A program made the translations under genes and the position numbers. A model generated the notes under the pieces. The model saw only the letters and a list, made by a program, of their open reading frames with translations, had not been told where the DNA came from and did not search any database. From the sequence record MK250021.1: DNA of 64,000 bases. The stretch is one strand, 5' to 3'. This document shows, piece after piece, positions 13,828-55,733 of the stretch. How positions within the stretch are numbered: position 1 is the stretch's first letter; each line of letters opens with the position of its first letter.

Positions 13828-13863
13828 TTAATTTTAATTAATAATCTTTAAATATTTATTATA

Positions 13864-14160: not shown

Positions 14161-14162
14161 TA

Positions 14163-25770: not shown

Positions 25771-25873
25771 NNNNNNNNNNNNNNNNNNNNNNNNNNNNNN
25801 NNNNNNNNNNNNNNNNNNNNNNNNNNNNNNNNNNNNNNNNNNNNNNNNNNNNNNNNNNNNNNNNNNNNNNNNN
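25771..25873. other. Assembly gap (Ns)
   Basis: N run. Confidence 1.
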
Positions 25874-25962: not shown

Positions 25963-26850
25963 TTAAATCTATTCTACTTTACTTCCACAATATGGACAAA
26001 ACTTAAACTTTGTATTCAATTTTCTCCCACAATTAGTACAATAAACTTTATTCAAATCATTCACATTATAAGGTTTTCTACTCATAGGTAAAATCTTTAT
26101 ATACTCTGACTTATAAGGATAATTATCAAAATCGTTATAAACAGATTCGAACTTCTGATTTGAATAACTTCCTTTCTCTATTCTACCTGTTTCAAATAAT
26201 TTATTTATACTATCAGATGAAATTGATTTACTAAAAGATTTTATTGAACTTGCATTTAATGTTGATGCTGATGTTTCAATTCCACTTGTATTAATAGCAG
26301 TATCATTCAATGAAGTAGAACATAATCTTGTATCATTAATAATTTGATTTTTATCATCTATTATAGAACTTGTGTTATTAATACATGTTGTTTTATAAAC
26401 AAATGGTGAAATAGAAGGATTACTCAATGGATTATTTAATGGTTTACTAATAAGTGGTTCATTCAAATTATGATTTAACCAATAATTACCATCATCTATT
26501 AATTTATAGATTTTATCATTTCTTTCTCTATAGAACTTTACTGTAATATTACCATTATTTCTAATAGCATTTTTTACTTGTTCATTATTATCATCTACTT
26601 CATAAGTAGAAAACTTAAATTTCTTATTATCATTTAAGTAACGTTCCAACCAACATCTTTGTCCAGGTTTAAGAACCAGCATTCCATCTAACTTATTTTC
26701 ATTAATATAAATTTCTATACCAATATTATAAGTCTCTGGATTAAATAACATAATTTCAAATTCTGTGTTATCATTCATATAAACAACACGTGAATCTTCA
26801 TTAGTCTAATACTCTTTCAATAGAGATTTGTTGACAGCTATCTTTGCCAT
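25963..26850 (-). CDS. Conserved phage protein with C-terminal Zn ribbon (code 15; start uncertain)
   Basis: MAKIAVNKSLLKEY*TNEDSRVVYMNDNTEFEIMLFNP...CTNCG..CPYCG; the frame stays open upstream to the gap. Confidence 0.75.
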
Positions 26851-26996
26851 CTTGTTTTCTTCTGTAATAATCATAAGTCTTAATTTATATTTTATTTTAA
26901 ACTTATCTATTAAACAATCGATTCTCTATATAAAAATCTCAAAAGAACTTTGTTTCATTCTCTGTCTAATAGAATATATCATTATCTATATTTTTC

Positions 26997-27425
26997 NNNN
27001 NNNNNNNNNNNNNNNNNNNNNNNNNNNNNNNNNNNNNNNNNNNNNNNNNNNNNNNNNNNNNNNNNNNNNNNNNNNNNNNNNNNNNNNNNNNNNNNNNNNN
27101 NNNNNNNNNNNNNNNNNNNNNNNNNNNNNNNNNNNNNNNNNNNNNNNNNNNNNNNNNNNNNNNNNNNNNNNNNNNNNNNNNNNNNNNNNNNNNNNNNNNN
27201 NNNNNNNNNNNNNNNNNNNNNNNNNNNNNNNNNNNNNNNNNNNNNNNNNNNNNNNNNNNNNNNNNNNNNNNNNNNNNNNNNNNNNNNNNNNNNNNNNNNN
27301 NNNNNNNNNNNNNNNNNNNNNNNNNNNNNNNNNNNNNNNNNNNNNNNNNNNNNNNNNNNNNNNNNNNNNNNNNNNNNNNNNNNNNNNNNNNNNNNNNNNN
27401 NNNNNNNNNNNNNNNNNNNNNNNNN
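26997..27425. other. Assembly gap (Ns)
   Basis: N run. Confidence 1.
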
Positions 27426-27537
27426 ACGAAAAAAGTCTACATATTTTTAATAATTTTTTCTAATAAAAATTAAACTTTATATTAATATATTAGTATAATA
27501 TATGTTAATAAAACATAAAATTAGATTAAAATACAAG

Positions 27538-29707: not shown

Positions 29708-30775
29708 ATGCAACATTTATATCAATTCTTACAGAGTAAGAGATTACCTGTTAGAGAAATATTGAGTTGTAATTGTCAGATAACAACAAAAGTTGACGGC
29801 TCTGCATTTCAATATTATAAACATCAAGGAAAAGTGTATTATTCGAAGAGACCTAATGCACCGTATATTCCTGGAAAGAATATCATTGATGAGTTTGACC
29901 TTATCATGAATAATATGTATAATAATGCATATAATATTCTTGAAAGTAATAAGAATAAAATTCCTGATGATATAGAGATATTAAATTTTGAAGTTTTTGA
30001 TAGAAATAAAGATAATCATATTATTAAATATAATGGTGAATATAAGAATGATATGGTTCTATTATCTGGCTATGATATGTTAGGAAATATTGTTCCTTTT
30101 GAAACATTGAAGAGTATAGCAGATGATTTAGATATTAGCTGTATAAATCTCCTGTATGACGATTATTTTTCTAAAGAGTATATTTCTTTACTGATGGAAA
30201 ATAAATGCGATACAGAGAAGATATGGTATCAAATTTCGAGTCTTATAAAGGATAAGATAGATATTGAAAATATAGAAGGTCTTGTATTGACGTTTAATGA
30301 ACATACGGACATAGAAAATATCAATAGAATATTGAAGATTCAATCTCCAAAATTTCATGAAGATATTATGAAACATTTGGAAGATGAAAAGAAATCAAAA
30401 CAAGATGTTAATCTTGAATGGATTTATGATATGTTTATTGAATCTGGTAAATATTTTGAAAATAGTGATGTGCATCCTATTACAAAATTATGTCAAATGT
30501 ACATAGCAACAGAGATCACAAATGAAGACTTTTCGAACATCGAAAATACTTTGAAAAAAGTTGAGATTTTGAGAAATCAAGAAATAAATATATCACTAAT
30601 ATCCAGATATTACTATATGTTTCCTAATAGTATGGATGATATAGAATATCCTACAATATTGAAATTCCTGTTTCTTGTATTCAGGAACAAACGAGTAAAG
30701 ACACCATTATGGTGTTCATTAGAATATCAGTTAAATAAAGTTAATCCTTTTATAGATAATTATATATTTAATTGA
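29708..30775 (+). CDS. RNA ligase (Rnl2-like) covalent nucleotidyltransferase
   Basis: Motif I TTKVDGS, III LNFEVF, IV IEGLVL, V ILKIQS. Confidence 0.7.
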   Translation: MQHLYQFLQSKRLPVREILSCNCQITTKVDGSAFQYYKHQGKVYYSKRPNAPYIPGKNIIDEFDLIMNNMYNNAYNILESNKNKIPDDIEILNFEVFDRNKDNHIIKYNGEYKNDMVLLSGYDMLGNIVPFETLKSIADDLDISCINLLYDDYFSKEYISLLMENKCDTEKIWYQISSLIKDKIDIENIEGLVLTFNEHTDIENINRILKIQSPKFHEDIMKHLEDEKKSKQDVNLEWIYDMFIESGKYFENSDVHPITKLCQMYIATEITNEDFSNIENTLKKVEILRNQEINISLISRYYYMFPNSMDDIEYPTILKFLFLVFRNKRVKTPLWCSLEYQLNKVNPFIDNYIFN

Positions 30776-30822
30776 TAATATAGACAATTTAATTAATAAC
30801 GCATATAAAAAATAATTTAGAT

Positions 30823-31758
30823 ATGGTAATCGCAATGCAAAATCAGTTTAGTGAGGATTATATGAACAATAATTACGGTATTGATTCAGTTGATGACAGA
30901 AAGAATTATGTTATCGACGACACAATGAATGTTGATGTAAATCTTGAAGCTTTAAAGCGTGAGGGAATTACAGAAGACGAAATTGACGAAATGTTTAATC
31001 TTGATGATGAAGCAATTAATAGTTCTATTAATGCTTTGGATTCTAAGAAGATTAATAAGTTAAAGAAACAAACATCAAAAGCAAAGAAGAAGCTTGAAGA
31101 TGATATTGTTCTTGTAAAGAAGTTTGTAGATAATCCTACACATGATAATTTCAATAAGTTGTGGGAGAGATTTTATTTCGGAGTAAAAGGACATGCATTT
31201 AAGTTTATGCATGACTGGGACCTTGCAGATGATATGACACTACAGACATTTACTCGTGCATGGGAGTTCCGTGATAAGTATGATATTGAGAAGGCAAAGT
31301 TCTCTACATGGTTGTATACAATTTGTCGTAACTTGTGTCTTGGAGAAATCAATAAAAGAAATAAGGAAAACATTGTTGGTAATGATATTTCTGATATGTT
31401 TGATTCTGCTATGTTGACTTCAAGTTCAGCAATGTCTACAAATTCTACACAGTATACAGTAGAGAATGGTGATTTAGTTGCGAATTCAGCAGATGATCTT
31501 GTATTGAAGATGTATGATACATCTCTTAATGAGATTGAGAAACTCGGCGGCACTTATGCAAAGGTTCTTCGTATGAAACTTGTTGATGACATGAAGATTA
31601 GAGAGATTGCAAATCAACTTAATATGAATGAATCAACAGTTAAGAATTATCTATATAAAGGAAAAGAAACACTTGAGTCTATTATGAAGACAAAGCATAA
31701 GGGACTTTATGAAATGTATCTTGAATCTGCAGGAGATGAAGCCGCAAAAATGATGTAA
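30823..31758 (+). CDS. ECF-type RNA polymerase sigma factor with N-terminal extension
   Basis: Region 2 ADDMTLQTFTRAWE..KFSTWLYTICRN; region 4 KIREIANQLNMNESTVKNYLYKGK. Confidence 0.88.
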   Translation: MVIAMQNQFSEDYMNNNYGIDSVDDRKNYVIDDTMNVDVNLEALKREGITEDEIDEMFNLDDEAINSSINALDSKKINKLKKQTSKAKKKLEDDIVLVKKFVDNPTHDNFNKLWERFYFGVKGHAFKFMHDWDLADDMTLQTFTRAWEFRDKYDIEKAKFSTWLYTICRNLCLGEINKRNKENIVGNDISDMFDSAMLTSSSAMSTNSTQYTVENGDLVANSADDLVLKMYDTSLNEIEKLGGTYAKVLRMKLVDDMKIREIANQLNMNESTVKNYLYKGKETLESIMKTKHKGLYEMYLESAGDEAAKMM

Positions 31759-31768
31759 GAATCAAAGG

Positions 31769-32272
31769 ATGAAACTAATTGATAATATAAAAGATTGGTG
31801 GTATTCATTTAAAGATGACTACCATCAATTTTCAAAAGATAAAATGATTAAGAAAGCATTTCATAAATTAATTCAGAGTGAATCTAATGACCGTGAAAGT
31901 TTTTTTAATCAAAGTAATTTACGAGCGACAAATGATTTTTATGAAGTCGCTCAGGTTATTGATATTCCAGAAGAGTATCAAATAAAGGGACAGCAATGGC
32001 AAATAATGGATAAGTTAAATGAAAATTCATTTTTTGTCACAAGATATTTAAGAGATGAACTTCAATTAGGTGATAATGTTTCTATTCCTGAATATTATCA
32101 TATAGAAGATCCATCAAGTGGAAAACCATTTAGTTGCAGGTATCTTGCTGTTTGGAATTATCAACCTGTATTGAAATCAAAAAAGAAAATTTATATTGTT
32201 AATACAATAATCGGAACTATTGGAACAACAGTAGTGTCAGGATTAACATGGTTAGCAATAATTTTACTATAA
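31769..32272 (+). CDS. Protein with C-terminal membrane anchor
   Basis: 167 aa with a hydrophobic C-terminus. Confidence 0.75.
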   Translation: MKLIDNIKDWWYSFKDDYHQFSKDKMIKKAFHKLIQSESNDRESFFNQSNLRATNDFYEVAQVIDIPEEYQIKGQQWQIMDKLNENSFFVTRYLRDELQLGDNVSIPEYYHIEDPSSGKPFSCRYLAVWNYQPVLKSKKKIYIVNTIIGTIGTTVVSGLTWLAIILL

Positions 32273-34494: not shown

Positions 34495-35481
34495 ATGGAA
34501 AATACATCGACAAATACAAGTAATAATACTCAACATGTAACACAGAAATTGTTTACAGAAATGTTAAGACCACAAACATTGGATCAAGCTATTATAGTTC
34601 CGAGAATTAGAGAGGTTCTTCAACACGGGTTGACAACTAATATTTTACTTTCCGGTTCCGCGGGTGCTGGTAAAACTTCCCTAACTCGCATCTTAACTCG
34701 CGGATACCAAGTTCTTGAAATTAATGCATCTCTTGAAAATGGTATTGATACCATTAGAGATAAAGTTATTGCATTTGCATCTCAGTCATCTCTTTTTGAT
34801 GGTGAGGAAAAACTTAAGGTTGTTGTTCTTGAAGAGTGCGATGGTCTTTCTCTTGAAGCTTGGAAAGCTCTTCGTGCAACAATTGAAAAATATCATAAAA
34901 CTGTTAGGTTTATTGCAAACTGTAATTATATCGATAAGGTACCAGAACCTATTCAATCAAGATTTAATGTTATTATAATTGATCCGCTTACAAAAGAAGA
35001 AGAAGATTATCTATTTAACGGTTATCTTGAGAGAATTAAATATATTCTTACAAAATTTAGAATTCAATTTACAGAAGAAACAGTAACATCATTTGTAAGA
35101 AGTTCATTCCCTGATATGCGTTCACTTCTTAATAAGATCCAAAATCTTTATACAAGAGGATTAAAAGAATTATCAGTTGATATGCTTGCATCTTCTTATG
35201 ATTGTTCAGAGTTGTTTAAGCTTATAATTGATAAACCGGATCCTGTAAACAATTATAAGAAACTTGTTGCAGATTGGTCAACACGCTCAGATGATGCAGT
35301 TCTTGCAATAGGTAAGGATTTTCCTGATTTCATATTGACAACATGTCCACAATATGGTTCAAAACTTCCACTTATTCTTATAGCAACAGCAGAATATAAT
35401 TCTATGCTTGCAACATCAATAGATAAGTTTGTGACATTGCTTGGACTTGTATTTAAATTGCAGTTAATTATACATCAATAA
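34495..35481 (+). CDS. gp44: Sliding-clamp loader ATPase subunit (T4 gp44/RFC-like)
   Basis: LLSGSAGAGKTS, EINAS.ENGIDTIR, VVVLEECDGLS, RFIANCNY, PIQSRF. Confidence 0.9.
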   Translation: MENTSTNTSNNTQHVTQKLFTEMLRPQTLDQAIIVPRIREVLQHGLTTNILLSGSAGAGKTSLTRILTRGYQVLEINASLENGIDTIRDKVIAFASQSSLFDGEEKLKVVVLEECDGLSLEAWKALRATIEKYHKTVRFIANCNYIDKVPEPIQSRFNVIIIDPLTKEEEDYLFNGYLERIKYILTKFRIQFTEETVTSFVRSSFPDMRSLLNKIQNLYTRGLKELSVDMLASSYDCSELFKLIIDKPDPVNNYKKLVADWSTRSDDAVLAIGKDFPDFILTTCPQYGSKLPLILIATAEYNSMLATSIDKFVTLLGLVFKLQLIIHQ

Positions 35482-35557
35482 TTTTTAGAATATAAAATAA
35501 AAATGTATCTTTGTATTATTAGTTTTATATGAAGATACATTTTTAATTTATAAATAT

Positions 35558-35758
35558 ATGGCAACAAATAGTAGTGAAATTCTTACATTTCCTTTTAAGG
35601 TAAAGAAGAAATCAGGTAAACCATTTAAATCAATGTTAAAAATAAATACAGCAGTAGGAACAGTTAAAAATGAAAATGATCCTAATAAAAAAGATGCATT
35701 TATTTTTAAAGAAGATAATTCTGTTGTGAATGTAGATATGTGTGAAATTATTATGTAA
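35558..35758 (+). CDS. Small hypothetical protein
   Basis: 66 aa; FPFKVKKKSGKPFKS. Confidence 0.65.
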   Translation: MATNSSEILTFPFKVKKKSGKPFKSMLKINTAVGTVKNENDPNKKDAFIFKEDNSVVNVDMCEIIM

Positions 35759-35871
35759 TAATAAATTATTAAAAAGTAGACTAACTATTAATATATAAGT
35801 ATAATATATAAATTATAGTGAATATTTCATTATAAATAAATCATAAAACAAAAATTTAATTTAGAAAAAAG

Positions 35872-36051
35872 ATGAACGATATTTTGACAAGTATTAATGA
35901 GGCATTCGCTGGTTTCCAGGCAGATGCAACCGCTCAGGTAGAGAAGGGTAATAAGGCTGCAGGTCAGCGTGCACGTAAGGCATCTCTTGCAATTGAGAAG
36001 TTGCTTAAGACATTCCGTAAGGAGTCTATCGAGGCTGCTAAGACAAAGTGA
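35872..36051 (+). CDS. Histone H1-like (Hc1-type, Bacteroidota) nucleoid protein, 59 aa
   Basis: Below the track cutoff; F.ADA.AQVEKGNKAAGQRARKASLAIEKLLK.FRKES; higher GC. Confidence 0.85.
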   Translation: MNDILTSINEAFAGFQADATAQVEKGNKAAGQRARKASLAIEKLLKTFRKESIEAAKTK

Positions 36052-36126
36052 TAATTAACATTGTTTAACTTAATAAAGAATTATCTTTACATTATTTAAT
36101 TAGAAGTAAAGATAATTTTATTATAT

Positions 36127-36198
36127 GCATGATTAGCTAAGTGGTACAGCAGGAAACTTTAAACTTCCAGATCACGGGTTCGATCCCTGTATCATGCA
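36127..36198 (+). tRNA. tRNA with UUA anticodon (ochre suppressor-type); CCA not encoded
   Basis: Acceptor GCATGAT/ATCATGC + A73, D arm GCT/AGC with GG, anticodon arm GGAAA-CT TTA AA-CTTCC, T arm ACGGG-TTCGATC-CCTGT. Confidence 0.88.
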
Positions 36199-36344
36199 CA
36201 TCTAAATTTAAAATAAAAGTATAAAACTATGGAACTTCAACATTGGTAAGTTACATGTGATCGTGGACCTTAATTTTTGTATATTTTAATTTTATATATT
36301 AATCATAAAACTATTATTAAACAAAATTAAAACTATACAAAATT

Positions 36345-36728
36345 ATGAAAACACAAAAAGAAAATGTAATAAGATTTAAGAATTATCTTAAGAAAAGAAT
36401 ATCAGAAAGAAAACAACTTAAATTAATAGCGAACAAATCATCAAAAGATAAAGATTATAATTGGATTAAATCTAGTCATGCTAAATCAGAATTAGAAGAA
36501 ACATTAGAAGATATACATGCACTGTATATTGCATATTATATTGTAAAACATGATTTAATTAGTCAAGAAAAAGAACTTGATTATATGATAGAATGTTCAA
36601 AAACATTTAAGAAACATTATACTGTATATACAACGAAACAATGTTTTTTATCACAATATGGATATGTAAACAAGAAAATAAATGAATATCTAAATAAGTT
36701 TGGTTATGAAAGTGAATTTATTAAGTAA
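36345..36728 (+). CDS. Hypothetical protein
   Basis: 127-aa basic ORF. Confidence 0.75.
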   Translation: MKTQKENVIRFKNYLKKRISERKQLKLIANKSSKDKDYNWIKSSHAKSELEETLEDIHALYIAYYIVKHDLISQEKELDYMIECSKTFKKHYTVYTTKQCFLSQYGYVNKKINEYLNKFGYESEFIK

Positions 36729-37083
36729 ATTAAAAATATTTACTAATAAACATAAAGTTATTAATTTTAAATTAGAAACAAATAATAAACTTTATATATT
36801 AGTAAGTAATCAATTGAATCCTATATATGGAGCAGTTCAAGGAGGTCATGCAATAGCACAGTTTTTAATTGAGCATCCTAATTCTGAATGGAAAAATAAT
36901 ACTGTTGTTTATCTTTCATGTGATATAGATAATTTTTTAAATAGACAAAAGAAACGTAATCAATTATTAAAAGATGAATTACATAGTGTATTTAAGGAAT
37001 CAGATTTAAATAATCAAATAACAGCAATAGCATGTTATAAGATACCTCAAAAATATGTAAAGAATTTGAAGTTGTTGAGATAA
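36706..37083 (+). CDS. Peptidyl-tRNA hydrolase type 2 (PTH2)-like protein
   Basis: KLYILVS..L...AVQGGHAIAQF...WKNNTVVYL...FKESDLNNQITAIAC. Confidence 0.65.
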   Translation: MKVNLLSKLKIFTNKHKVINFKLETNNKLYILVSNQLNPIYGAVQGGHAIAQFLIEHPNSEWKNNTVVYLSCDIDNFLNRQKKRNQLLKDELHSVFKESDLNNQITAIACYKIPQKYVKNLKLLR

Positions 37084-37182
37084 TAAACAATATATAGAGA
37101 TAATAGATAAGTAAAAATATTCTATTATCTCTTTTTATTTAAATAGAAATAAATAATTAAACTATTAATAGTATTTTTAATT

Positions 37183-38280
37183 ATGAAATTAGTTAACGAG
37201 AAAATAGGATATGTGGATGAAAAGCAGTTTAAACTTTCAACTGTAGTGAATGCGATGGTTGAATTTTTAACATCTCCTGATATTCATTGGGATTCTAATT
37301 ATGAAGTTAAAGGAAAGCCTAATGTAAAGGATATAGATGGATTTGGTTATCATACTTTTACATTTGATTTAGATAATAATAAATTAGGATTTATAAAAAT
37401 TATTATTGTTAATATAGACAAAGATAAAGTAAAGTCTACATATAAATTCCAAGGATTTTTAGACGATGAAGAAACAGCTTTTTATTCACCTGTTGATTCT
37501 ACTGTAGATAAGAAGAAAAATAATTGTGGATATATCTATATTAATTATGATATATTTAAAGAATATATTTCAGATAAACAGAAATTAACAGATGAATTAA
37601 AGGAATATACATATCATGAGTTAAGACATTATTATGATAATATAATGGGCGTATTCGGTGGACCATTGAAAGAACTTATACATATTACATTGATAGCTGA
37701 TGAATTTGATATTAATAAACAAACATTCAAGGAGAAGAATAAAGAAGCATTAACTAAACATGATACAACATATAAGTCATTGCAGAATCTTCTTTATGTT
37801 TCACAACCAACTGAATTAAATGCTTGGTATCATTCATTCGTTCAACATATGATGGTATATCAGAAGAAGAATCCAAATGCAACAAAAGATGATATTATAA
37901 ATTATATTACAAAACCTGAATTAAACGGTAATGATTATGCATGTTTCATTTACAGTTATGCTATTGTATATAAGACATTCGGTAATTATGCTAAAGCTAT
38001 AAACGGTTTGTGTTCACAAGATCCTGTTAAGTTGTATTATTATATAATTAATACATTGAATGAATGTCAACCATCTGATAAGACTATTAAACAGATGAAT
38101 GATTTATTTGAGAAGAATTATATTGATTATTTCACAGATACTGTTGATTATAAAACATTCGGTATAAAGTTAAGTGCATTCATTAATGATTATTACATGC
38201 ATTATGTGTATAAGAAAATTGCGTCTAAGTATTTACATACATATAAGAATATGCAGAAGTTTATTTCTACACTTGTTTAA
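37183..38280 (+). CDS. HExxH zincin-like protein, 365 aa
   Basis: TYHELRHYYD and SQPTELNAW; no TAG. Confidence 0.75.
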   Translation: MKLVNEKIGYVDEKQFKLSTVVNAMVEFLTSPDIHWDSNYEVKGKPNVKDIDGFGYHTFTFDLDNNKLGFIKIIIVNIDKDKVKSTYKFQGFLDDEETAFYSPVDSTVDKKKNNCGYIYINYDIFKEYISDKQKLTDELKEYTYHELRHYYDNIMGVFGGPLKELIHITLIADEFDINKQTFKEKNKEALTKHDTTYKSLQNLLYVSQPTELNAWYHSFVQHMMVYQKKNPNATKDDIINYITKPELNGNDYACFIYSYAIVYKTFGNYAKAINGLCSQDPVKLYYYIINTLNECQPSDKTIKQMNDLFEKNYIDYFTDTVDYKTFGIKLSAFINDYYMHYVYKKIASKYLHTYKNMQKFISTLV

Positions 38281-39036: not shown

Positions 39037-42000
39037 TTATAATTGATAAATTGTACTCATGCCTATAGTTGTTATTTCATCTTTAATTCCATGTACATAA
39101 AACTATACAACTAATTGTAATATACCTATTTCTTTCCTACCAGAATTATTTTCTGATATATAATCTGTTATTATACCTCGTTGATTATGTAATATCTTAA
39201 AGTCTTTTATCTTTAACATTGAATCTTCAAAATTTTCCGATGATATTTCTTCTATTTCTCCACCAGATCTTTCCAATGTATATCTTATATTATGAATATA
39301 ATCTCTAATAACATACTCTTCAATACTATCTAATCCTTCTTTAGGTAAATCTTTAACGTCAAACATTAAGTTATATATATTAGTTGTAACAGAAGTACCA
39401 TATTGTTTAATAGATAATGAATGAATCTACTCATGTTGTATAAGGTCTCTATCAGATTTCTTGTCAATTGTCAACATACATTGTAATTCACCAATTTTTG
39501 ATTTATGTGATTCTGTTGCTTCCTTTGCAGTAAATTTAACTTTATTTGTTTTTGAAACATTACCTTTCTATGTTAGAAGATTACATGTACATCCTTCTTG
39601 TTCGACAATGGTTCCGTCACTATAATAAATTTTATACTTAACAGAAACATTATTAGAGTTATCAGTAGATGCACCAGTTTCATTCATATTATAAATAACA
39701 GTTTCACCGTAAGTTGATAATGTATTTAATGGTGAGAACTATGATTCAAATCCCACAATAAATACATCTTTATAATATATGTCACGAGTACCTGTTTCAA
39801 ATTTACCTACGGTATCTTCTCCTTTATCTACATAAACAAAACCATCTGCTTCATTTATAACTCTATTACCATATACGTCACAACAAATCATATTAGGCGA
39901 TTGTGAACCTAATAATTCTGGTTTAATAGTTAATATCTTATTTGCAGATTTAAACACAACTTGCTTATCTATTAATCCTTGTTCTGTTTGCCATGTTTCC
40001 TAATCTTCTATTATATATGATTTCCAATCCCAATGAACTCTTAACGGAATATCTTTATCATTAAATTTCTATGATAATATATTCTATGAAGAATCTGGTT
40101 TTAATATAATATTTCTACCATTTGATATTGTAACAGGTTTATCTTTGAATACATAAAGATTTTCATTTGTATATTGAAGACTTGCGTCTATCCATATATT
40201 CTGTAAAAGTTTAGGATCATAATCAAATACCTAGGCGGAATATGTAGTATCGAGATAACTGTCAAATAACAATGGTTTTGGTTCATATGTCACAGAAGTT
40301 CTCTATACGACACCTTTATTATATCTGGATGTAAATTCTTCTCCATAACTATTAACACGTAATATATACTACGCTGCACGTAAATGTGCAGGACACATCT
40401 TTAATTTATATGGATTAAGTGTCGTTAATTTACCACCAACATTTAATGTACGTTCTGCTTTATTATGATATAACTTATTATTGAATTTCTATAAATCAAC
40501 TACACCATTTAATGTATATGTAAATGTATTATCTTCATTCTATGATATATTAATAATTCTATATGCTGTTTCATTATCTATCGCATTATTTGTATAATCA
40601 TTATGAATTTCTGTTTCATCAGTATAACAAATTTTAACAACTTGATTCTCCATGAATCTTTGTTTGGTATCATTTGTAATATGAACATAAGATAAATTAT
40701 TGGATGTATCAACTGTTAATTCTTTATCTATTGTACTATTACCTTTGGAATCTTCAAACACATATTCATTTGCTGTATATACATATGCGTTCATGGAATT
40801 AATGAAGAATGCAGATGAGTTAATAGATGAGTTAACATTTTTATCAATAGATTTCTAATATATATCATCAAATGCTTTTTCATTTAACATGTTTGACTTT
40901 TTCTTTACTGTTATGTAAGAATTATTTAAGTCAAACCTATAATAAGATGAATCTATAATAGATGAATCATGCGTATAGAATTTTTCTACCTCAAATGGAT
41001 ATATATCAACTAATATATCTTTTTGAATGCAATCATATATACATAAGCCAACATATGATGAATTTGCTAATATTTCTCTACTTGGACTTTCATCAACCAA
41101 TATGAATTTATATATATCATTAGTTTTCTATATACTTAAAACCTATTCAGTGAAGTTATTGAATACTATGAAATTACCAGGTTTTGGAGTATCAATAGCA
41201 TATGATATATTATCATATTCTATAGTGTTAGGTGAATCAACCAAAGGATCAATATCATATATTCTATATGTCTAAGGGTAAATAGGATAATTACCAAACT
41301 TGTCTATATCTTTAAATAACTATTCTTGCTCTGTATTTTTTAATTTATCACCTAATGAATTTCTATTATAAAAATCTTTATTATTTACAACTTCTTGTTG
41401 ATTAAGAATAATATCAAGACTTATAGGCTTTGTAGTAACTGTAGTAGTATCATCACTGTTATTCACGAATATATTATTATAATAATCATATGCGTTTACC
41501 GAAACAGTATAATTACCTAATCTGTTTACAGACACATCTACATATCTGTTAGTAGAAACACATTTATCTATTTCCGCATTTGATGTTGCAGTTTTTAATT
41601 TTGAACTATCAACAGTATAAATAGGAACTCTATCAGATAAGTAAGTATAATTTACAGTTATTGGTTGTTCACTACTTTCTAATTCTTCTCCGAATACTAA
41701 TTCACATCCGCATGCCTTACCATTATTAATATTTAAATCTGATTGCTTATTCCTAAATAATATTCTTCCTTCTATAATCTCAAGAATGTAATCACCTGGT
41801 AGTAACTCGTCATTATTACCGCATTTATAATTACGGATAATTATCTAAGGTACATTCCATTTATTCTATGATGTATATATGAATTCTGAATCTAAACCAT
41901 TATAAGTTTTTGAACTTATTTTCTTATTTGTTTTCTATGCCCAATATAATTTATACTTATCATAATTTCTTTCATTTTCCATAGGATATAAGAAAACTTT

Positions 42001-44520
42001 CTAGAAGTCTTTATATACAGGTTCATCAGTTTCCTACTCATATAAAGCATAATATTCTTTACCATTTTTCTGATCACTCACAACATTAATTGAATATGCA
42101 ATATTAGTTTTCCAGTCACCGTGACAATACCTTAAATTACCTTGAGTTATTTCAATTATAGGCAATTCAGATTTATCGATTTTAGAAAAATTCTATGTAT
42201 CATCATAAAATAATATTTCATTATCCTATATAAGAATAGGGTTCTATATATAAGAAGAATCTGTAAATTCAGCTAATGTACCAGATGAAACATCTTTATT
42301 TGTTAATACAAACTAATATTCCTATACAGGTACTAATGTTTCTAATGGAGCAGAAACATATATTGACGAATTCAATGTTTCATTATATACTTCATTTATG
42401 ATAAAATCTTCTATTTCAAAATCATCATAATCTCCTATTGTTAAAGAATCAAATTCATTTAATGAGCATTTCAACATTGCTGACGAATCTCTAAATAAAA
42501 TATCATTTATACACATATCATCAACAGATGTATCTAAATGTGAAAGAGATGCATCTAATGTATCATTATGATATTCATTATTAGATGAATCTGTTGTTAC
42601 ATTTATATATGGATTATTATGAACAATCTTAGGTGTTACTTTAGCAATAGTTGTAATATCCTACAAATGATGCTATGTAACATATGCCTAATTTTTCATT
42701 CTCTCAATGATTATTCCTTCACCACATATATCAGATATATAACAGTTGACACCCAATATATATTTTTCTAACCATTGTTTTACAGAGAATAATTTTGCGA
42801 GAATTTCATCCGTTCTGTATTCATATATAGGTTTAGTTATAGGAAGTTGAAAAAATACATCTTGTTTTTCAGTAAATCCAGTGCTCAAATCTTGGTGATG
42901 TGTATCTTTATTATATGATGATTTATATAAACCAGATTCAGGTGAAGTTGTTGGATTATCTTTTGCTGGATTATCCAAACGTCTTGTATACATGGTGATT
43001 TTTTCACCTGTTTCATCATCTATTTCATTAAGGTGATATATCATGGATAATCTGTTTATCTTCTTATAACGTTCGAACTCACCATATGTAACACCTATTT
43101 TCTTTAACTTAGTATTTAACGATTCACCTTTCTATAAATCATATGTCTGTAAAGTTACATATCTATCTTTGTTATTCTAATCCTTTATTTTATACCATTC
43201 CTTAAATATTAAGTCGCCATATCCTAAAAATTTGATAGCTCCCATTAATGCTTTATATGTACCAACATAAGGGAATATCTGATCATAATTAATCATAAGT
43301 TCTTTAGACTTTGTATTAATTAATGTCCAGTCAACACCCTATTCATCAACATCTTGTTCCTTAAATATATTAGGATATTTAACAGGATCAGGAATTCCAA
43401 AATTTCCTAATAATGCTCTAAACCTTTCATCTTCCCCTTCAACTTCAGTTAAGAATGTAAACAAACCTAAAATATACTTTTTCTTTGTTTGTGTATTAAC
43501 AAGATACATTGCCATTATATTTTGATAACATCCTTCAACCTCTGTTTGAAATCCAACAGAGAAATATATTGGTGTATTTTCAGGTGTTTGATTAAATTGA
43601 TCATAAAAATTTAATTTAGTATTAACCTCATATGAATCTTCCCATATAATGTTTGCAACAGAATCAGATGATATGAATCTCATTTCAGAATCTTTTTGAA
43701 ATTCAAATCTCAATGTATAATCAGTGTTTGAATTATCGAAAGTAGGTCTACCATTTCCATCGTTAGTATTAGTAATAATAATAAATGTACTGGCAGCTAC
43801 AAATTCTGTTGAAACTTTATCCTATTGAATCTATCCAGTATATCTCACACAAGGAAATAAATCATCATAATTAAAATTATTAACAATAAGATAATTAACA
43901 AATGTTCTCTAACCTAACATTTTATTATCTTTCTATGTCTCATCATCAAATTCTGCAATAGTTATTAAGTTATTATCTATTTTATAATATATTGCCTTTT
44001 CATCTTTAATTTCCTCTGTATTTACATTATCAAATATATAATTAATTGGATAATCCTATGTAATAGTTTCAGATAAAGTATGAAAAGTTAATCTTACCGT
44101 ATTATATACATAATCTGTTTGTTCTTCAAATTTTTCTTCCCATATATGCTCATTTCTATTATATATAGTACCAGTGGATTTTGAATAATCAACTTTTTTA
44201 TTAAATAATATTAATTCTTTAATATTATTTAATTCCTTTGTAATTATAGTTTGTCCTGTTTTATGATTTACAATACTGGTATTTACTGTTATTCCAGCGT
44301 TAAATAAGAATAAACCATGTTTATCTATTACTGTTGTTAATGTATGATTACTATCTGCAATATCATACATGAAATGTCCTGATGGTGTTTCAATAAAATA
44401 CTGCTCTAACTATGCATGCGGAATTATTTCCCATTGAATACTGTATACTTTTTCAACAGGAATTTCATATCCTTTTTCTGTAAAGAAAATTAATTTATCT
44501 CTTTCATCTATATTGTTCAT
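39037..44520 (-). CDS. Very large baseplate wedge-like (gp7-like) structural protein, ~1827 aa (code 15)
   Basis: Nine same-frame track fragments separated by TAG; FPYVGTYKALMGAIKFLGYGDL segment; next to gp25- and gp6-like genes. Confidence 0.7.
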
Positions 44521-44530
44521 CTTTCAATTA

Positions 44531-44785
44531 TCAATTTAAATTTGTAGCATTTTTAGGATATGTATATGCGTATGCCAACTTTATCTGTTTAACCTAATCT
44601 ATCAAGAATTCAAATAATCTTTCTATTTGTCTGAATATTGTATCATTCATAGGGTTAGCGAATAATTCAGGTGAAATAACATTCTTCAATATATGATGCT
44701 TATAATCATAACCTAAATTTTTATAATCATCATACATGTGGTCTTCCTATTCGGTAAATGAATTAATATACTTAAAACGTGGCAT
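44531..44785 (-). CDS. Small baseplate-associated protein, 84 aa (code 15)
   Basis: MPRFKYINSFTE*EDHMYDDYKNLGYDY...; TGA at 44531-44533. Confidence 0.7.
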
Positions 44786-44874
44786 ATAATAAATATTCCT
44801 TTTATTTCATTATTTATTATGAAAAAAGAGAATAACTCATTTCTGAATTACTCTCTTTTAATATTTTATATTTA

Positions 44875-45249
44875 TTATTGTTGGTTTACAATAATACCTA
44901 AACATTTCTTTTCATTTATACTAATATCTATCAATGCATATTCATATGGATCATCTGCATTCTTACCAAACATTACATCAATAGATAATTCCCATTTATT
45001 ACTGTCATAATAAACATACTCTATAATTTCCTATCTGATTGCAGTTAATATTTCTTCTTTATTTAGATTCATTCTAAATAAGTATTTTTCGAGATCACAA
45101 CCAAACATAGGTGTTCCTAATACTTCTCCAGGTTTTGTACCCAAAACAACTCTTATCTATTGGAGTAATTGAAATACTTCATCCTATGTTTCTACTTTTG
45201 GTTCATAATCAAGGTCAGTAGGAAGTTTACAATATAATTCTCTTGTCAT
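44875..45249 (-). CDS. gp25: Baseplate wedge protein, gp25/GPW-like, 124 aa (code 15)
   Basis: LLQ*IRVVLGTKPGEVLGTPMFGCDLEKYLF. Confidence 0.8.
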
Positions 45250-45254
45250 AATTA

Positions 45255-47171
45255 TTATGTAATAGTCTTAAAGTTTTCCAATGTTAATTTATTATTCTAT
45301 GTATATCCTATCAACTACATGTTAAATGCAGATAATGATTCATAAGATTGAACGTCTGAATATTCTACACCATCTGGAGATGTAAATCCACCTCTAATCA
45401 ATGGTAATATATCTCTGACTTCTTTTGAATTACCATTATAATCTGCATATGTCCGTGTTAATATAATATCACCATAAGAATCAATACCGTAAAATCCTCG
45501 CTCACAATATATATTCTCATTTTCTACATCTGCGTCAAACCAAACTTTAACAGAATCAATTCCGTCTATTGCTTCGAATAATGCAGTAATGTCAGATAAT
45601 GGAATAATATCCTTACGTGTGAAATTAATAAGATAATTTGATAAAGCAGACAAACATGCAGAATATACACTCTATATATTATATCCTTCCCAAATCTTCA
45701 CCTGTGTATTAACTGCAAATCTTGGTGTCTTTGGTTCAAGAATCTTATTTTCAACTGTAATGATTTTCTACCCTGAATTATCAATTAAGTTAATGATATT
45801 ATTCTGTTCATCCGTTGATAATGTAAATACAGATTCATCTACAGTGAAATAATTAGAAGATGATGAAATCCGTTTACTTAAATCAGGAATCAATAAAAGA
45901 TATACAGTATTATCCGCGAGATCAGTATCCTCAATTTGCTATTGCGCGAAATTTCGTTTACTTAAAATATCCTGAAGATTATTATATAATTCCTTCGCTT
46001 GATCTGATTGTTCACCATATACAGAAACTGCATCTTGCCAGTCACTGAATGTATTTTTATACATCGTATTATATACATCGTAATTAAGCTATGCCATGTA
46101 ATTAGCTTGTTTCTATGTATAGCCTTTAATTATTTCTATTGTGGAGAACATATTCATTCTCTTAAAGAAATATCTATAATTAATTTCATTCGCTAATACA
46201 AATGATCTAGATGTATGAGGCGCAATTAACTAAGTTAACATTATATCCTCTGATGCCGAACCAAATATAACGTCTGTATCACATTGAACTCTAAAATTAT
46301 CAGCTAATGAAATTTCAGAACCATCTGTTGCATATCCAACACCTTGTATCTCAAAATATTGATCTTGATCTAGTATTTGTTTTGGTAAGTTTCCACCTGC
46401 ACCATCTGTTACTACATATTCTACATAAATAGTTGAGCCTTGTGAAGGTGTTTTTCCCATTGCACCATTACCGAATATAACATCAATTCCACCGTTAATA
46501 CCGGTTTTAACCATACATGCTTTCTAATCAAATCCTGCATCTATAAGAGAATCAACCATATCCCATAATTCACCGTTTACATAAACATTAATAAAATATT
46601 CATCAATATCTGCATAATTTCTTTCTGTGAAATTATAAGATTGCCATTTACCACCTGATGCAGTAGCTGCTTGATATTTAACTGTTCCTTGTATAATGGT
46701 TGCAGTTATATAATTACCTGCTGTCATTGTGATCTAAGCAGAATCTGCACCAAATAGAATAGTATAAGTTGCACCATTAATTGCACAAAGGAGTTTTGTT
46801 CTATTAGGTATGAAACAAACTGTTCCATTCAAATCTTGATTACCGGTGTCATAATAAACTATCTTAACAGCACCACGAGCTGCAATAGCTCTACCAGCAT
46901 TATGTCCCGCTAATCTTGCCAATCCTCTAATCTAATCAGGTCTATATGCTGTTTTTATATTTAAACCTGTTATAGAATCTTCTATATAATAGAAAATCAT
47001 TCTACCGAGATGAAGAATTACAGAAAGTAACTATGCGAAAGGTGAAGCCATTGTAAATTGCTACCCTGTAACATTATATGTTTTCTTCACCCATGCAACA
47101 GCATCATTCCATAATTGTTCATATTTAAGACGGTTCAGCTTGAATATTTTTATATCATAAATTGATGCCAT
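45255..47171 (-). CDS. gp6: Baseplate wedge protein, gp6-like, 638 aa (code 15)
   Basis: LLSVILHLGRMIFYYIE..NIKTA...IRGLARLAGHN; VIFGNGAMGKTP..IYVEYVVTDGAGGN; same-frame fragments joined through TAG. Confidence 0.82.
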
Positions 47172-47173
47172 TT

Positions 47174-48391
47174 TTATTTAATTTTCTCTAATTTTTCTAA
47201 TCTTTTTTCAAGTTTTTCTAATGTTTTCTTTAAATCATTATTTTCAGATTCAAGTTTAGAAATTCTCTATTCATGTATTTTCTTCGTCTTTTGAAGATCA
47301 CCTAATACAAGTGAAATAGCGGCTGAATAGTTAACACGCCAATGATTAAGATCATCCTTATCCATCAAATAAGATAAACCGTGTTTTTCAAGGTCCTGTG
47401 CGATAAATCCATATGAAAGTTCAGAAGTATCAAGCCATCGGAATTGAATAACATCCGGTATATAAGTAGATGTATCTATTTCCTAAACATCTGTTTTCAA
47501 TTCAATATCAGAAGAAGCGTAAAAAGCATTTGCGTAAACATTCTTTCTTGAAACATAAACATTAGTCTCTATATTACCGTCATCCGCGATATATTTTGTT
47601 TCGCCAATATCACGTCCATTATAAGATTCCTCTGTAATACCGAGAATATAATATTTCTTATAATCAGCAGTTGTATATGAAAGTGAACCCGCGTTATATG
47701 TTTTCCACATTAATTGGTTATTCGCATAATTAAATACAGGGACTTTACCATTTTCCTAAATAGTAGGTTTTAACCATGTAATACCTGGTGTATTTGCACC
47801 ATATTCATTAGACAGTGAACCCCAAAAAGATATATATCCTGTAGAAGGACATGAGAATACAAGATTATTACCATTATAACCTATACCAGGAAGATCTTGT
47901 ATTTTTCCAGTTCCTCCTTTCATTCCAAATACAATACCTCCTGACATTTTACCACCAATTAAAGGGAGATATGTAGATGTATTATAATCTTGAAAACTAT
48001 CAATTTTCGTATTTACTTTATCTATTGAACTGTTAAGCGAATCTAAATTATCGTTTATAGTTGTCTTAATCTCATCTATAACTTCAGTCGCACGAACTGC
48101 TGTATCAATCGCATAAAGTGAAACATCCAGGCGATAAAGTCCTGATGCAGTATCAGATTCTATTTTTGTTATATAATAAAATGGAAGTTGCGCTTTATTT
48201 AACGCGTCTGATATATTTGATTTTGAAACTGAATTTAACTTATTTCCTACTACCAATAATCTGTTATTAAGAGATGTTCGGTAAACCTGTCCATTATAAG
48301 TCTGCTCAAAATATAGAGTCTCTATACATGTCGCCAATGAAATAGGGTTACCATCTCTTGTATATTGTTGTCTAACCTAAGCTGTCTACAT
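47174..48391 (-). CDS. Tail fibre/spike protein with C-terminal intramolecular chaperone (peptidase S74), 405 aa (code 15)
   Basis: SSDIELKTDV...FRW...YGFIAQDL..VNY..plus a terminal coiled coil. Confidence 0.8.
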
Positions 48392-52820: not shown

Positions 52821-52842
52821 AATATATTTAGATTATGATTAA

Positions 52843-55728: not shown

Positions 55729-55733
55729 TTATC

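What the first reader, a model, noticed from the sequence alone, without database searches (positions are those of the whole stretch)
36127..36198. tRNA with a UUA anticodon (reads the UAA stop) in a genome whose main stop is TAA
Seen: a clean 72-nt cloverleaf, anticodon loop CU-UUA-AA (TTA at 36159-36161), A73, an A31-C39 mismatch and no encoded CCA. Known: UUA-anticodon (ochre) suppressors read UAA and also UAG, code 15 needs only a CUA tRNA, and the loop is one base from tRNA-Lys(UUU). Inference: a second or weak UAG decoder, a device for programmed TAA readthrough or termination sabotage of host genes, or a decoy/evader for anticodon nucleases. The charged amino acid is unknown (Lys-like versus Gln).
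Basis: partly seen in the sequence, partly recalled or inferred. Interest (0 to 1): 0.78.

Follow-up and report, generated by a model that had tools for sequence, protein, structure and literature searches.

The report
Known ochre-suppressor tRNA of Lak megaphage
The window comes from the giant gut phage Lak-B2, and the feature is a real, conserved tRNA that reads the stop codon UAA; it is already published for all Lak phages, but its function is still unknown.

Summary
A 72-nt tRNA with anticodon UUA lies at 36127-36198(+) (ARAGORN; Rfam 59.5 bits). It has A73, no encoded CCA and an A31·C39 mismatch.

The window is Prevotella phage Lak-B2 (MK250021.1, record position = window + 310000). TAG encodes Gln in many genes, and TAA ends 46 of 52 window ORFs and 507 of 579 genome ORFs.

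The UUA anticodon is not an error. It is unchanged in all 15 Lak GenBank records, in other IMG/VR and metagenome contigs, and in contigs of two independent sequencing studies. Three acceptor-stem pairs changed in a compensated way between lineages.

The gene is already published. Devoto 2019 Table S2 lists this exact gene, and Crisci 2021 found a TTA suppressor in 51 of 51 Lak genomes with no evidence that TAA is recoded.

What this analysis adds:
- The tRNA has a Lys-like scaffold, not a Gln-like one, unlike the phage's Gln-like Sup-CUA.
- No phage GlnRS or LysRS was found. An RF2 gene without a frameshift is present.
- Four genome-wide tests found no sign of functional TAA readthrough.
- The Lak-B genomes that seem to lack Sup-CUA carry an intron-split copy.

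Best guess (about 0.38): a general UAA/UAG reader in the recoding kit with Sup-CUA and RF2. The function remains unproven.

The parts
36127..36198 (+). tRNA gene with anticodon UUA (the published 'Sup-TTA'). It is 72 nt, has A73 and encodes no CCA.
   Evidence: ARAGORN and Rfam RF00005 at 59.5 bits. Three acceptor-stem pairs show compensated changes between Lak lineages. The gene is listed as '346127 346198 Sup TTA 60.45' in Devoto 2019 Table S2.
36159..36161 (+). Anticodon TTA (UUA in RNA). It pairs fully with UAA and, by U34·G wobble, with UAG.
   Evidence: It is invariant in every ortholog found and in independent contigs.
36157..36157 (+). Position 32 of the anticodon loop. It is C in Lak-B and Lak-C1 and U in Lak-A1 and A2, and is one of the few variable positions.
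   Evidence: Alignments, and the C>T change in run X7.
36087..36119 (+). AT-rich block 8-40 nt upstream of the tRNA, largely conserved between the B and A/C lineages while the 3' flank is not. It may be the tRNA's own promoter; this is inference only.
   Evidence: Alignment A1. No terminator-like site was found, and sigma-70-like matches were not above the shuffled expectation. No second copy of the block exists in the genome.

Best explanation
This is the 'Sup-TTA' tRNA of Lak megaphages: a functional, selectively maintained phage tRNA gene whose UUA anticodon pairs with UAA (fully) and UAG (by U34·G wobble). It is built on a generic Lys-type class-I scaffold, not on the Gln scaffold used by the phage's Sup-CUA. 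It must be charged by a host synthetase, because the phage encodes no GlnRS or LysRS.

The most likely working model is that it belongs to the recoding kit together with Sup-CUA and the phage's RF2, which lacks the usual frameshift. It competes with release factors at UAR codons. At UAG, which RF2 cannot read, it backs up decoding of the roughly 1,400 in-frame TAGs. At UAA it is largely outcompeted by RF2, and any leak-through adds only a few residues because the next in-frame stop lies a median of 5 codons downstream.

Shown: the gene exists and has a tRNA fold; its anticodon is conserved and its stem changes are compensated; its scaffold is not Gln-like; TAG encodes Gln; TAA behaves as a true stop; RF2 is present.

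Inferred: that it is expressed and charged, which amino acid it carries, that it reads UAG by wobble, and that it is functionally coupled to RF2.
For: Gene and fold.

Selection: the acceptor stem is GCAUGAU/AUCAUGC in Lak-B and GCUCUAU/AUAGAGC in Lak-A/C, giving 3 pairs changed on both sides with 100% pairing in that helix. The flanking DNA diverges with indels.

Universality: all 15 Lak GenBank records and 51 of 51 Lak genomes in Crisci 2021, PMC8346664.

Kit partners: Sup-CUA at record 415547-415618 is Gln-like, with U1-A72 and 73-74% identity to tRNA-Gln(CUG). RF2 lies at record 292737-293873, matches TIGR00020 at 402.8 bits, has no internal stop or frameshift, and is TAG-free.

TAG = Gln: 7.0% of B2 CAA codons and 7.0% of CAG codons align to TAG in Lak-A1, against 0.8% or less for any other codon.

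Leak-through is tolerable: the median distance to the next in-frame stop after TAA is 5 codons.

Literature link: among TAG-recoded phages, phage RF2 was reported only in Lak phages and two Agate phages (Borges preprint). Lak is also the clade that always carries the UUA tRNA, which fits RF2 offsetting an ochre-type suppressor.
Against: The scaffold lacks the Gln marks U1-A72 and G2-C71 that both Lak Sup-CUA versions keep. If the tRNA carries Lys, it would put Lys at Gln positions whenever it read UAG, yet codon alignments show no Lys enrichment at TAG (AAG 0.8%, AAA 0.3%).

A UUA anticodon always reads UAA better than UAG. In E. coli, tRNAPyl(UUA) gave no amber suppression above background (Odoi 2013, PMC3592851, abstract).

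Every complete Lak genome I examined has a CUA gene, either intact or intron-split, so the UUA tRNA is not needed as the only TAG decoder.

The conserved A31·C39 mismatch may make it a weak decoder.

No RNA data exist: no listed run holding the stretch is on record as RNA.
Confidence: 0.38

Rival explanations
1. It is a dedicated UAA reader. The tRNA would exist to read through TAA stops, either to disturb termination on host (or competitor) mRNAs or to make minor C-terminally extended phage proteins. Which amino acid it inserts would then matter little.
For: UAA is its cognate codon. The non-Gln scaffold is easier to explain if the amino acid does not matter. The gene is solitary, has a conserved upstream block, and sits in a TAG-free island next to clamp-loader and sigma-factor genes.
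Against: The phage genome shows no adaptation to such a role. The share of TGA stops is the same in TAG-containing genes (27 of 216) and TAG-free genes (45 of 363). Back-up stops are not enriched in frame. Substitutions after TAA show no coding pattern: 0.182/0.168/0.200 by codon position (p=0.07), against 0.173/0.114/0.308 inside genes. Long in-frame extensions turn out to be separate small ORFs with their own ATG. Same-frame neighbours are 59 of 226, which is not enriched. A phage-encoded RF2 would counteract UAA readthrough on every mRNA. 88% of the phage's own genes end in TAA.
Confidence: 0.2
2. It has a role outside decoding. A Lys-like tRNA body with an altered anticodon could act as a decoy or inhibitor for host anticodon nucleases that target tRNA-Lys (PrrC/RloC type), or as some other RNA-level effector.
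For: The scaffold is Lys-like and the loop is one base from tRNA-Lys(UUU). The phage also carries two tRNA-Lys(UUU) and one tRNA-Lys(CUU). This is analogy only.
Against: The anticodon itself is invariant while position 32 varies, which points to codon reading. The A36-A37-A38 loop is typical of tRNAs that read U-starting codons. No nuclease or partner gene was found near it. Nothing here tests the idea directly.
Confidence: 0.08
3. It is a mutational buffer. In a 26% GC, 550-kb genome, CAA, AAA and TAG codons often mutate to TAA, and a weak ochre suppressor would partly rescue such nonsense alleles.
For: The genome is extremely AT-rich. It holds 1,381 in-frame TAGs plus thousands of CAA and AAA codons one step from TAA. 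A weak suppressor would fit the A31·C39 mismatch.
Against: No conserved gene carries an internal TAA in either genome when B2 and A1 are compared. Selection for such second-order robustness is usually weak, which fits poorly with presence in 51 of 51 genomes.
Confidence: 0.06
4. It is an artefact or a decaying pseudogene: a miscalled anticodon, an assembly error, or a tRNA-Lys copy that recently mutated and is not used.
For: It has two A·C mismatches (13·22 and 31·39) and encodes no CCA.
Against: The anticodon is identical in every Lak lineage and in independent samples. The stem changes are compensated. The Rfam score is high. Both mismatches are conserved rather than accumulating.
Confidence: 0.02

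Closest known systems
Sup-TTA tRNA of Lak megaphages (Devoto et al. 2019, Nat Microbiol, PMC6784885; Crisci et al. 2021, iScience, PMC8346664)
   Same: It is the same object. Supplementary Table 2 of Devoto 2019 lists 'Sup TTA 346127-346198, score 60.45' for this genome. Crisci 2021 reports a TAA-binding suppressor in 51 of 51 Lak genomes and states that no other evidence suggests TAA is recoded.
   Different: Nothing differs in the object. The papers give no scaffold or identity analysis, no covariation analysis and no explicit readthrough tests. They count 13 of 51 genomes as lacking a CTA suppressor, and some of those may carry intron-split copies like the one I found in Lak-B1, B3, B6 and B9.
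E. coli lysine-inserting ochre suppressors supG/supL (tRNA-Lys with U36 changed to A). Cited from established knowledge, not from a tool.
   Same: The anticodon is UUA in a C-U-UUA-A-A loop, the discriminator is A73, and the body is a class-I Lys-type body. Such tRNAs read both UAA and UAG.
   Different: The E. coli suppressors are laboratory mutants of a host gene and are weak because strong ochre suppression is harmful. This one is a natural, conserved phage gene with no close host homolog. Its charged amino acid is unknown.
Ciliate code-6 pair tRNA-Gln(UUA) plus tRNA-Gln(CUA). Cited from established knowledge.
   Same: A UUA tRNA and a CUA tRNA coexist in a system where UAG means Gln.
   Different: In ciliates UAA is also a Gln codon and both tRNAs are Gln tRNAs. 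Here TAA remains the main stop and the UUA tRNA is not Gln-like.
Sup-CUA tRNAs of code-15 phages such as crAss-like, Lak and Garnet (Borges et al., bioRxiv 10.1101/2021.08.26.457843)
   Same: These are phage-encoded stop-codon-reading tRNAs in TAG-recoded genomes, placed in TAG-free patches, with C32, A37 and A38 in the loop.
   Different: The wobble base differs (U34 instead of C34), so UAA is the cognate codon. The acceptor stem is not Gln-like. A role in recoding is not established.

Membership tests
tRNA (Rfam RF00005) | A cloverleaf with four helices and conserved D-loop and T-loop residues, scoring above the family's gathering threshold | tested here: met
   59.5 bits against a gathering score of 29, with model positions 1-71 all matched. 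ARAGORN agrees.
tRNA (Rfam RF00005) | Base pairs kept through compensatory change in relatives | tested here: met
   Three acceptor-stem pairs changed on both sides between the Lak-B and Lak-A/C versions, with 100% pairing in that helix. In the control, 14 of 500 shuffles reached this level. There are only 4 distinct sequences and in effect one lineage split.
Ochre-class suppressor tRNA (functional class) | Anticodon 5'-UUA-3' in a 7-nt loop with U33 | tested here: met
   The loop is C32 U33 U34 U35 A36 A37 A38 and is invariant across orthologs.
Ochre-class suppressor tRNA (functional class) | It is transcribed, processed, given a CCA tail and aminoacylated | not testable with these tools
   No listed run holding the stretch is on record as RNA, and the runs laid were contigs only.
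Ochre-class suppressor tRNA (functional class) | It suppresses UAA (and UAG) in vivo | not testable with these tools
   This needs reporter assays. The genome shows no footprint of readthrough.
Gln-type stop-codon decoder (as in Lak Sup-CUA or ciliate tRNA-Gln UUA) | A Gln-type acceptor stem (U1-A72, G2-C71), as seen in the host tRNA-Gln, the phage tRNA-Gln genes and Sup-CUA | tested here: not met
   The UUA tRNA has G1-C72 and C2-G71, invariant in both lineages. The Prevotella tRNA-Gln, Lak Gln(UUG), Lak Gln(CUG) and both Sup-CUA versions all have U1-A72 and G2-C71.
tRNA-Lys-derived ochre suppressor (supG/supL type) | A73, U34 and U35, with a loop one substitution away from tRNA-Lys(UUU) | tested here: met
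   Read directly from the sequence.
tRNA-Lys-derived ochre suppressor (supG/supL type) | The body is closest to tRNA-Lys among known tRNAs | tested here: inconclusive
   The best sense-strand non-Lak phage hit is tRNA-Lys(CUU) of Rhodococcus phage Francesca (82% over 59 nt, E 9e-5). Next come tRNA-Asn, a Sup-CTA and tRNA-Thr. The host tRNA-Lys(CUU) shares the G1, C2-G71, A3-U70 and A73 pattern. Overall identity to host and phage tRNAs is flat at 0.68-0.72 across many isotypes. No close host homolog was found in 151 genomes.
tRNA-Lys-derived ochre suppressor (supG/supL type) | Charged with lysine by LysRS | not testable with these tools
   The phage encodes no LysRS or GlnRS, so charging would depend on host enzymes.
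TAA-to-sense reassignment (code 6-like) | In-frame TAA codons inside conserved genes | tested here: not met
   In the Lak-B2 versus Lak-A1 codon alignments, no internal TAA or TGA has conserved, ungapped flanks. Reading TAA as sense gives more and shorter ORFs rather than restoring long ones. Crisci 2021 reached the same conclusion.

The most novel reading that the evidence does not exclude
The Lak UUA tRNA is a Lys-type (or otherwise non-Gln) natural ochre suppressor that the phage deliberately runs against its own over-supplied RF2. That would be a two-component system setting stop-codon strength, with UAG open, UAA leaky but capped and UGA tight. Its real target might then be termination on host or competitor mRNAs, or a few phage genes, rather than TAG decoding. 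This would be the first natural, clade-wide use of an ochre suppressor by a virus whose own genes mostly end in UAA.
Probability: 0.2. Interest if true: 0.65.

Novelty: already known. Interest (0 to 1): 0.35.

Why it matters
Lak megaphages are among the largest known phages and are widespread in human and animal guts. How they switch the host's translation to a code in which TAG means Gln is a live question. All of them carry a tRNA for UAA, the stop codon that ends 88% of their own genes, and this paradox has been published but never explained.

Three things would resolve whether stop-codon recoding in phages needs more than one suppressor tRNA, and why Lak phages also carry RF2:
- which amino acid the tRNA carries;
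- whether it reads UAG, UAA or both in Prevotella;
- whether the phage RF2 is there to hold it in check.

The result would also bear on gene calling for recoded phages. The practical by-product here is that 'missing' CUA suppressors can be hidden behind introns, which affects surveys that count suppressor tRNAs.

Tried and rejected
- **Recent capture of a host tRNA.** BLAST of the tRNA against 151 genomes of the Prevotella family gave only chance-level partial hits. Rejected.
- **UUA tRNA as the only phage suppressor in some complete genomes.** The Sup-CUA gene and its upstream ORF are absent from that locus in Lak-B1, B3, B6 and B9, and Rfam finds no tRNA there. ARAGORN with introns then found a Gln-like tRNA split by a 245-nt insert, whose spliced loop would be CUCUAAA. 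Its acceptor stem and D arm match the intronless Sup-CTA #2 of Lak-A1. Idea dropped.
- **TAA readthrough signatures.** All negative: TGA share by gene class, back-up stops, internal conserved TAA, codon-position substitution pattern after TAA, same-frame neighbours and individual long extensions.
- **Base after the stop (+4 position).** T follows 55% of TAA stops, but also 53% of TGA stops. The context of TAG mirrors that of CAG. Not informative.
- **Shared promoter motif among the UUA tRNA, the CUA tRNA and RF2.** None found; the upstream block is unique in the genome.
- **Neighbouring proteins.** No tRNA-modifying enzyme or synthetase lies nearby. Only a clamp loader, a sigma factor and a histone-H1-like protein could be named.
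- **Divergent Lak relatives.** Fragments whose clamp loader is 53-64% identical carry no tRNA at all, so they give no information.
- **Mycobacteriophage tRNA-Lys hits.** These are antisense matches and were discounted.
- **RNA evidence.** No RNA run holds the locus.
- **Whole-genome file.** None is held for the window, so I fetched the public record in pieces.
- **Masked stretches.** The fetched public record has letters where the window has N (window 25771-25873 and 26997-27425). One whole-genome ARAGORN scan ran before I re-masked those positions; it reported nothing there. All later analyses used the re-masked copy. I never printed or used those letters, and I did not study that region.

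Full report
**1. The observation**

ARAGORN finds a single tRNA in the 64-kb window, at 36127-36199(+). It is typed 'tRNA-Stop', and its anticodon tta starts at base 33, which is 36159-36161. Rfam's tRNA model matches 36127-36198(+) over its whole length at 59.5 bits, against a gathering score of 29, with E 2.4e-10.

Read from the sequence, the gene breaks down as follows:

| Element | Sequence |
|---|---|
| Acceptor stem | GCAUGAU / AUCAUGC |
| D arm | GCUA-AGUGGUA-CAGC |
| Anticodon arm | GGAAA-CUUUAAA-CUUCC |
| Variable loop | AGAUC |
| T arm | ACGGG-UUCGAUC-CCUGU |
| Discriminator | A73, followed by CAT (no CCA) |

Two pairs are non-standard, A13·C22 and A31·C39.

**2. Where the window comes from**

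Megablast places the window in Prevotella phage Lak-B2 (MK250021.1). This is a circular 549,839-bp genome assembled from baboon faeces, and window position equals record position minus 310,000.

The window is 20-32% GC. Reading TAG as sense raises coverage by ORFs of at least 100 codons from 0.58 to 0.94 and gives fewer, longer ORFs. Reading TGA as sense does not help, and reading TAA as sense only multiplies short ORFs.

With TAG read as Gln, the 52 main window ORFs hold 274 in-frame TAGs, spread in a mosaic of TAG-free and TAG-rich genes. Of these ORFs, 46 end in TAA and 6 in TGA. I made a crude gene set for the whole genome (579 ORFs; the paper reports 594). In it, 507 ORFs end in TAA and 72 in TGA, and there are 1,381 in-frame TAGs.

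**3. The anticodon is real and conserved**

The orthologous gene in Lak-A1, A2 and C1 lies in regions about 81% identical in DNA, and it has the same anticodon. All 15 Lak records in GenBank hold the gene. So do 7 IMG/VR contigs and 6 metagenome contigs.

The two pattern scans left the three anticodon bases free. Even so, every tRNA they hit reads UUA; two extra matches in metagenome contigs are not tRNAs.

Contigs of three public runs from three studies (X1, X7, X11) cover 36159-36161 with no difference. The only change inside the tRNA is 36157 C>T at position 32, which is also the Lak-A state.

Between the Lak-B and Lak-A/C versions, pairs 3-70, 4-69 and 5-68 of the acceptor stem all changed on both sides (A-U to U-A, U-A to C-G, G-C to U-A), and pairing is kept. 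The flanking intergenic DNA carries substitutions and indels. The pair count gives 3 pairs with double changes and 100% pairing in that helix, and versions with the partner slid sideways collapse. The caveat is that there are only 4 distinct sequences and in effect one lineage split. Both A·C mismatches are the same in all copies.

An artefact or a decaying pseudogene is therefore excluded for practical purposes.

**4. It is already published**

Supplementary Table 2 of Devoto et al. 2019 (PMC6784885) lists '346127 346198 Sup TTA 60.45', which is this exact gene. [quoted passage not shown]

Crisci et al. 2021 (PMC8346664) state that 38 of 51 high-quality Lak genomes encode a TAG suppressor. 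[quoted passage not shown] Later papers I checked add nothing on its role. The object is known; its function is open.

**5. The rest of the translation kit**

The whole record has 34 Rfam tRNA matches. ARAGORN assigns them as follows:
- one CUA tRNA at record 415547-415618;
- tRNA-Gln(UUG) and tRNA-Gln(CUG);
- two tRNA-Lys(UUU) and one tRNA-Lys(CUU);
- the usual remaining isotypes.

RF2 lies at record 292737-293873. It matches TIGR00020 at 402.8 bits over positions 1-351, with no internal stop and hence without the usual programmed frameshift. It is TAG-free and ends in TAA. No GlnRS or LysRS is encoded, so host enzymes must charge the suppressors. The UUA tRNA, the CUA tRNA and RF2 each sit in a TAG-free patch.

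**6. Which amino acid? Scaffold comparison**

Sup-CUA is plainly Gln-like. It has U1-A72 and G2-C71, a D arm like the Gln tRNAs, and 73-74% identity to Lak tRNA-Gln(CUG). A Prevotella tRNA-Gln(UUG) shows the same U1-A72, G2-C71 and A73 pattern.

The UUA tRNA differs. It has G1-C72 and C2-G71, which stay fixed even though pairs 3-5 flipped, and A73. Its identity to any Lak or host tRNA is a flat 0.64-0.72, and it has no close homolog in 151 genomes of the host's family.

Among 50,697 phage records, the best sense-strand non-Lak hits are:
- tRNA-Lys(CUU) of Rhodococcus phage Francesca (82% over 59 nt, E 9e-5);
- a tRNA-Asn;
- a Sup-CTA of Stenotrophomonas phage DLP5;
- a tRNA-Thr.

The many Mycobacterium phage tRNA-Lys hits are antisense and do not count. 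The tRNA-Lys(CUU) of Prevotellamassilia timonensis, taken here as a stand-in for the host, starts G1, C2-G71, A3-U70 with A73, like the Lak-B version.

The loop CUUUAAA is one change from the Lys loop CUUUUAA. By established identity rules, LysRS reads mainly U35, with U34, U36 and A73 contributing; GlnRS reads U35 plus a weak 1-72 pair and G2-C71. On that basis a Lys-type origin is the most economical reading, and Gln marks are absent. This is an inference about ancestry. It does not prove what the tRNA is charged with, because GlnRS is known to mischarge tRNAs carrying U35-A36 anticodons.

**7. What TAG and TAA mean, tested on Lak-B2 against Lak-A1**

I aligned 575 B2 ORFs with their flanks to the A1 genome (median identity 79%).

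*TAG.* Of 1,038 aligned in-frame B2 TAGs, 468 are TAG in A1, 255 are CAA or CAG, 71 are AAA or AAG, and 40 are GAA. In the other direction, 7.0% of B2 CAA codons and 7.0% of CAG codons align to A1 TAG, against 0.8% or less for every other codon. TAG therefore means Gln, with no Lys signal.

*TAA.* Five tests found nothing:
- No internal TAA or TGA in A1 falls inside a B2 gene with ungapped flanks of at least 60% amino-acid identity.
- B2 TAA stops align to A1 TAA in 267 of 325 cases.
- Downstream of TAA, in unannotated DNA, mismatch rates by codon position are 0.182/0.168/0.200 (1,942 codons, p=0.07). The last 30 codons of genes give 0.173/0.114/0.308, and the two other frames are flat.
- The next in-frame stop after TAA is a median of 5 codons away, the same as in frame +1 and the same as after TGA stops.
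- The share of TGA stops is 12.5% in TAG-containing genes and 12.4% in TAG-free genes.

In addition, neighbouring same-strand genes are in the same frame in 59 of 226 close pairs, which is no excess. The few long, conserved in-frame 'extensions' are small separate ORFs with their own ATG, and in A1 one of them follows three stops in a row. The base after TAA is T in 55% of cases, but the same holds after TGA (53%), so this says nothing specific.

In short, the phage genome neither uses TAA as sense nor shows any adaptation for or against TAA readthrough.

**8. Is the UUA tRNA ever the only suppressor?**

The 1.07-kb region around Sup-CUA is complete in Lak-B2, B4, B5, B7 and B8. In the complete genomes B1, B3, B6 and B9, only the part downstream of the tRNA matches, and Rfam finds no tRNA at that locus. 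This fits the published counts of 30 versus 31 tRNAs.

In B2 the missing part holds a 253-aa GIY-YIG homing-endonuclease ORF with 8 TAGs, followed by the tRNA.

In B1 and the other three, ARAGORN run with introns allowed finds a tRNA with U1-A72 and a Gln-type D arm, interrupted in the anticodon loop by 245 nt. ARAGORN's own cut gives anticodon CGA. If the 5' exon ends in U and the insert ends in G, as is usual for group I introns (established knowledge), the spliced loop is CUCUAAA, giving anticodon CUA. The acceptor stem and D arm then match the intronless second Sup-CTA of Lak-A1.

A group I intron does exist elsewhere in this genome. RF00028 matches at 40.5 bits, E 1.8e-8 (below the gathering score of 50), at record 292055-292229, inside a Leu-like split tRNA just upstream of RF2. 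Rfam did not match the B1 insert itself, so calling that insert a group I intron is an inference.

The consequence is that the UUA tRNA is not the sole TAG-capable tRNA in any genome I examined. It also means some of the published 'CTA-less' genomes may hide split copies.

**9. How it most likely works**

What is shown: a conserved tRNA with anticodon UUA; a non-Gln scaffold; a Gln-type Sup-CUA; an RF2 gene without a frameshift; TAG meaning Gln; and TAA acting as a true stop.

My best model, at about 0.38, is that the tRNA is a general UAR reader that belongs to the recoding kit. RF2 cannot read UAG, so there the tRNA adds to Sup-CUA. At UAA it competes with RF1, host RF2 and the extra phage RF2, and what leaks through costs about 5 extra residues.

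One piece of literature fits RF2 being the counterweight to an ochre-type suppressor. Among TAG-recoded phages, RF2 was found only in Lak phages and two Agate phages, and Lak is the clade where the UUA tRNA is universal.

The model has four weak points:
- the non-Gln scaffold;
- the fact that U34 always favours A over G;
- a report that tRNAPyl(UUA) gave no amber suppression above background in E. coli, although classical E. coli ochre suppressors do read UAG (established knowledge);
- the A31·C39 mismatch.

The main rival, at about 0.2, is a role at UAA itself, meaning host termination interference or rare programmed extensions. It fits the scaffold better. It is opposed by the phage's own RF2 and by the lack of any genomic footprint. 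A decoy role against nucleases that target tRNA-Lys (0.08) and a mutational-buffer role (0.06) cannot be tested here.

**10. Verdict**

It is already in the literature for this very genome, so novelty is 'already known'.

The remaining value lies in the unexplained paradox and in four additions made here: the Lys-like, non-Gln scaffold; the compensated stem changes; four independent negative tests for TAA readthrough; and the hidden intron-split Sup-CUA.

The window has two N stretches, at 25771-25873 and 26997-27425. The public record I fetched for genome-wide statistics has letters at those positions. One whole-genome ARAGORN scan ran before I re-masked those positions, and it reported nothing there. 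I then re-masked them and used only the masked copy afterwards. I never printed or used those letters, and I did not study that region.

Noticed in passing
window 35872-36051 (+): A 59-aa ORF directly upstream of the tRNA encodes a histone-H1-like (HctA/Hc1-type) protein (NF051889, E 1e-10). By eye its sequence looks much richer in G+C than the surrounding DNA. It is 45-73% identical to proteins of Bacteroides, Dysgonomonas, Alistipes and Prevotella genomes, so it looks like a gene taken from a Bacteroidales host.
   Followed up: partly
window 1-64000 (e.g. TAG-free 8308-9237, 10268-15364, 17463-19379, 29708-32272, 34495-38280; TAG-rich 3847-8182, 39037-48391, 50160-56432, 56867-63998): TAG use is a fine mosaic. 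Blocks of genes with no TAG alternate with genes carrying up to 39 in-frame TAGs. CAG is very rare in the TAG-rich genes. The UUA tRNA sits in a small TAG-free island together with a clamp-loader gene (34495-35481); a sigma-factor gene (30823-31758) lies in the TAG-free block just before it.
   Followed up: partly
outside the window: Lak-B2 record 414762-415618 (L037:1263-2120); Lak-B1 L207:1172-1489: The Sup-CUA locus differs among the nearly identical baboon Lak genomes. B2, B4, B5, B7 and B8 carry a GIY-YIG homing-endonuclease ORF followed by an intronless Gln-like tRNA(CUA). B1, B3, B6 and B9 carry a different Gln-like tRNA split by a 245-nt insert, and its spliced anticodon would be CUA. 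Standard tRNA scans miss the split copy, so published counts of CTA-less Lak genomes may be too high.
   Followed up: partly
outside the window: Lak-B2 record about 291909-292652, just upstream of RF2 (292737-293873): A split tRNA-like gene lies here. Its variable arm resembles that of the tRNA-Leu(UAA) of the Prevotellamassilia reference genome. It holds a 649-nt insert containing a group I intron match (RF00028, 40.5 bits, E 1.8e-8, below the gathering score). ARAGORN's call of Leu(gag) is doubtful, and I did not work out the exon borders or the anticodon.
   Followed up: partly
outside the window: Lak-B2 record 30584-30995: ARAGORN calls two over-long tRNAs here, Ile(gat) of 99 nt and Tyr(ata) of 94 nt, in a 1.1-kb stretch without ORFs. 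The Rfam tRNA search of the whole record did not report them. They may be false calls or further intron-bearing tRNAs.
   Followed up: no
window 25771-25873 and 26997-27425: These are two N stretches (103 and 429 bases). Following the operators' note I left them alone and did not study the ORFs that run into them (25963-26982 and 26828-27463).
   Followed up: no
window 36127-36198: Both non-standard pairs of the tRNA, 13·22 and 31·39, are A·C, and both are conserved in every copy. In a 26% GC genome this could be G-to-A drift that is tolerated as A+·C wobble pairs, or a deliberate weakening of the D and anticodon stems. I could not tell which.
   Followed up: no
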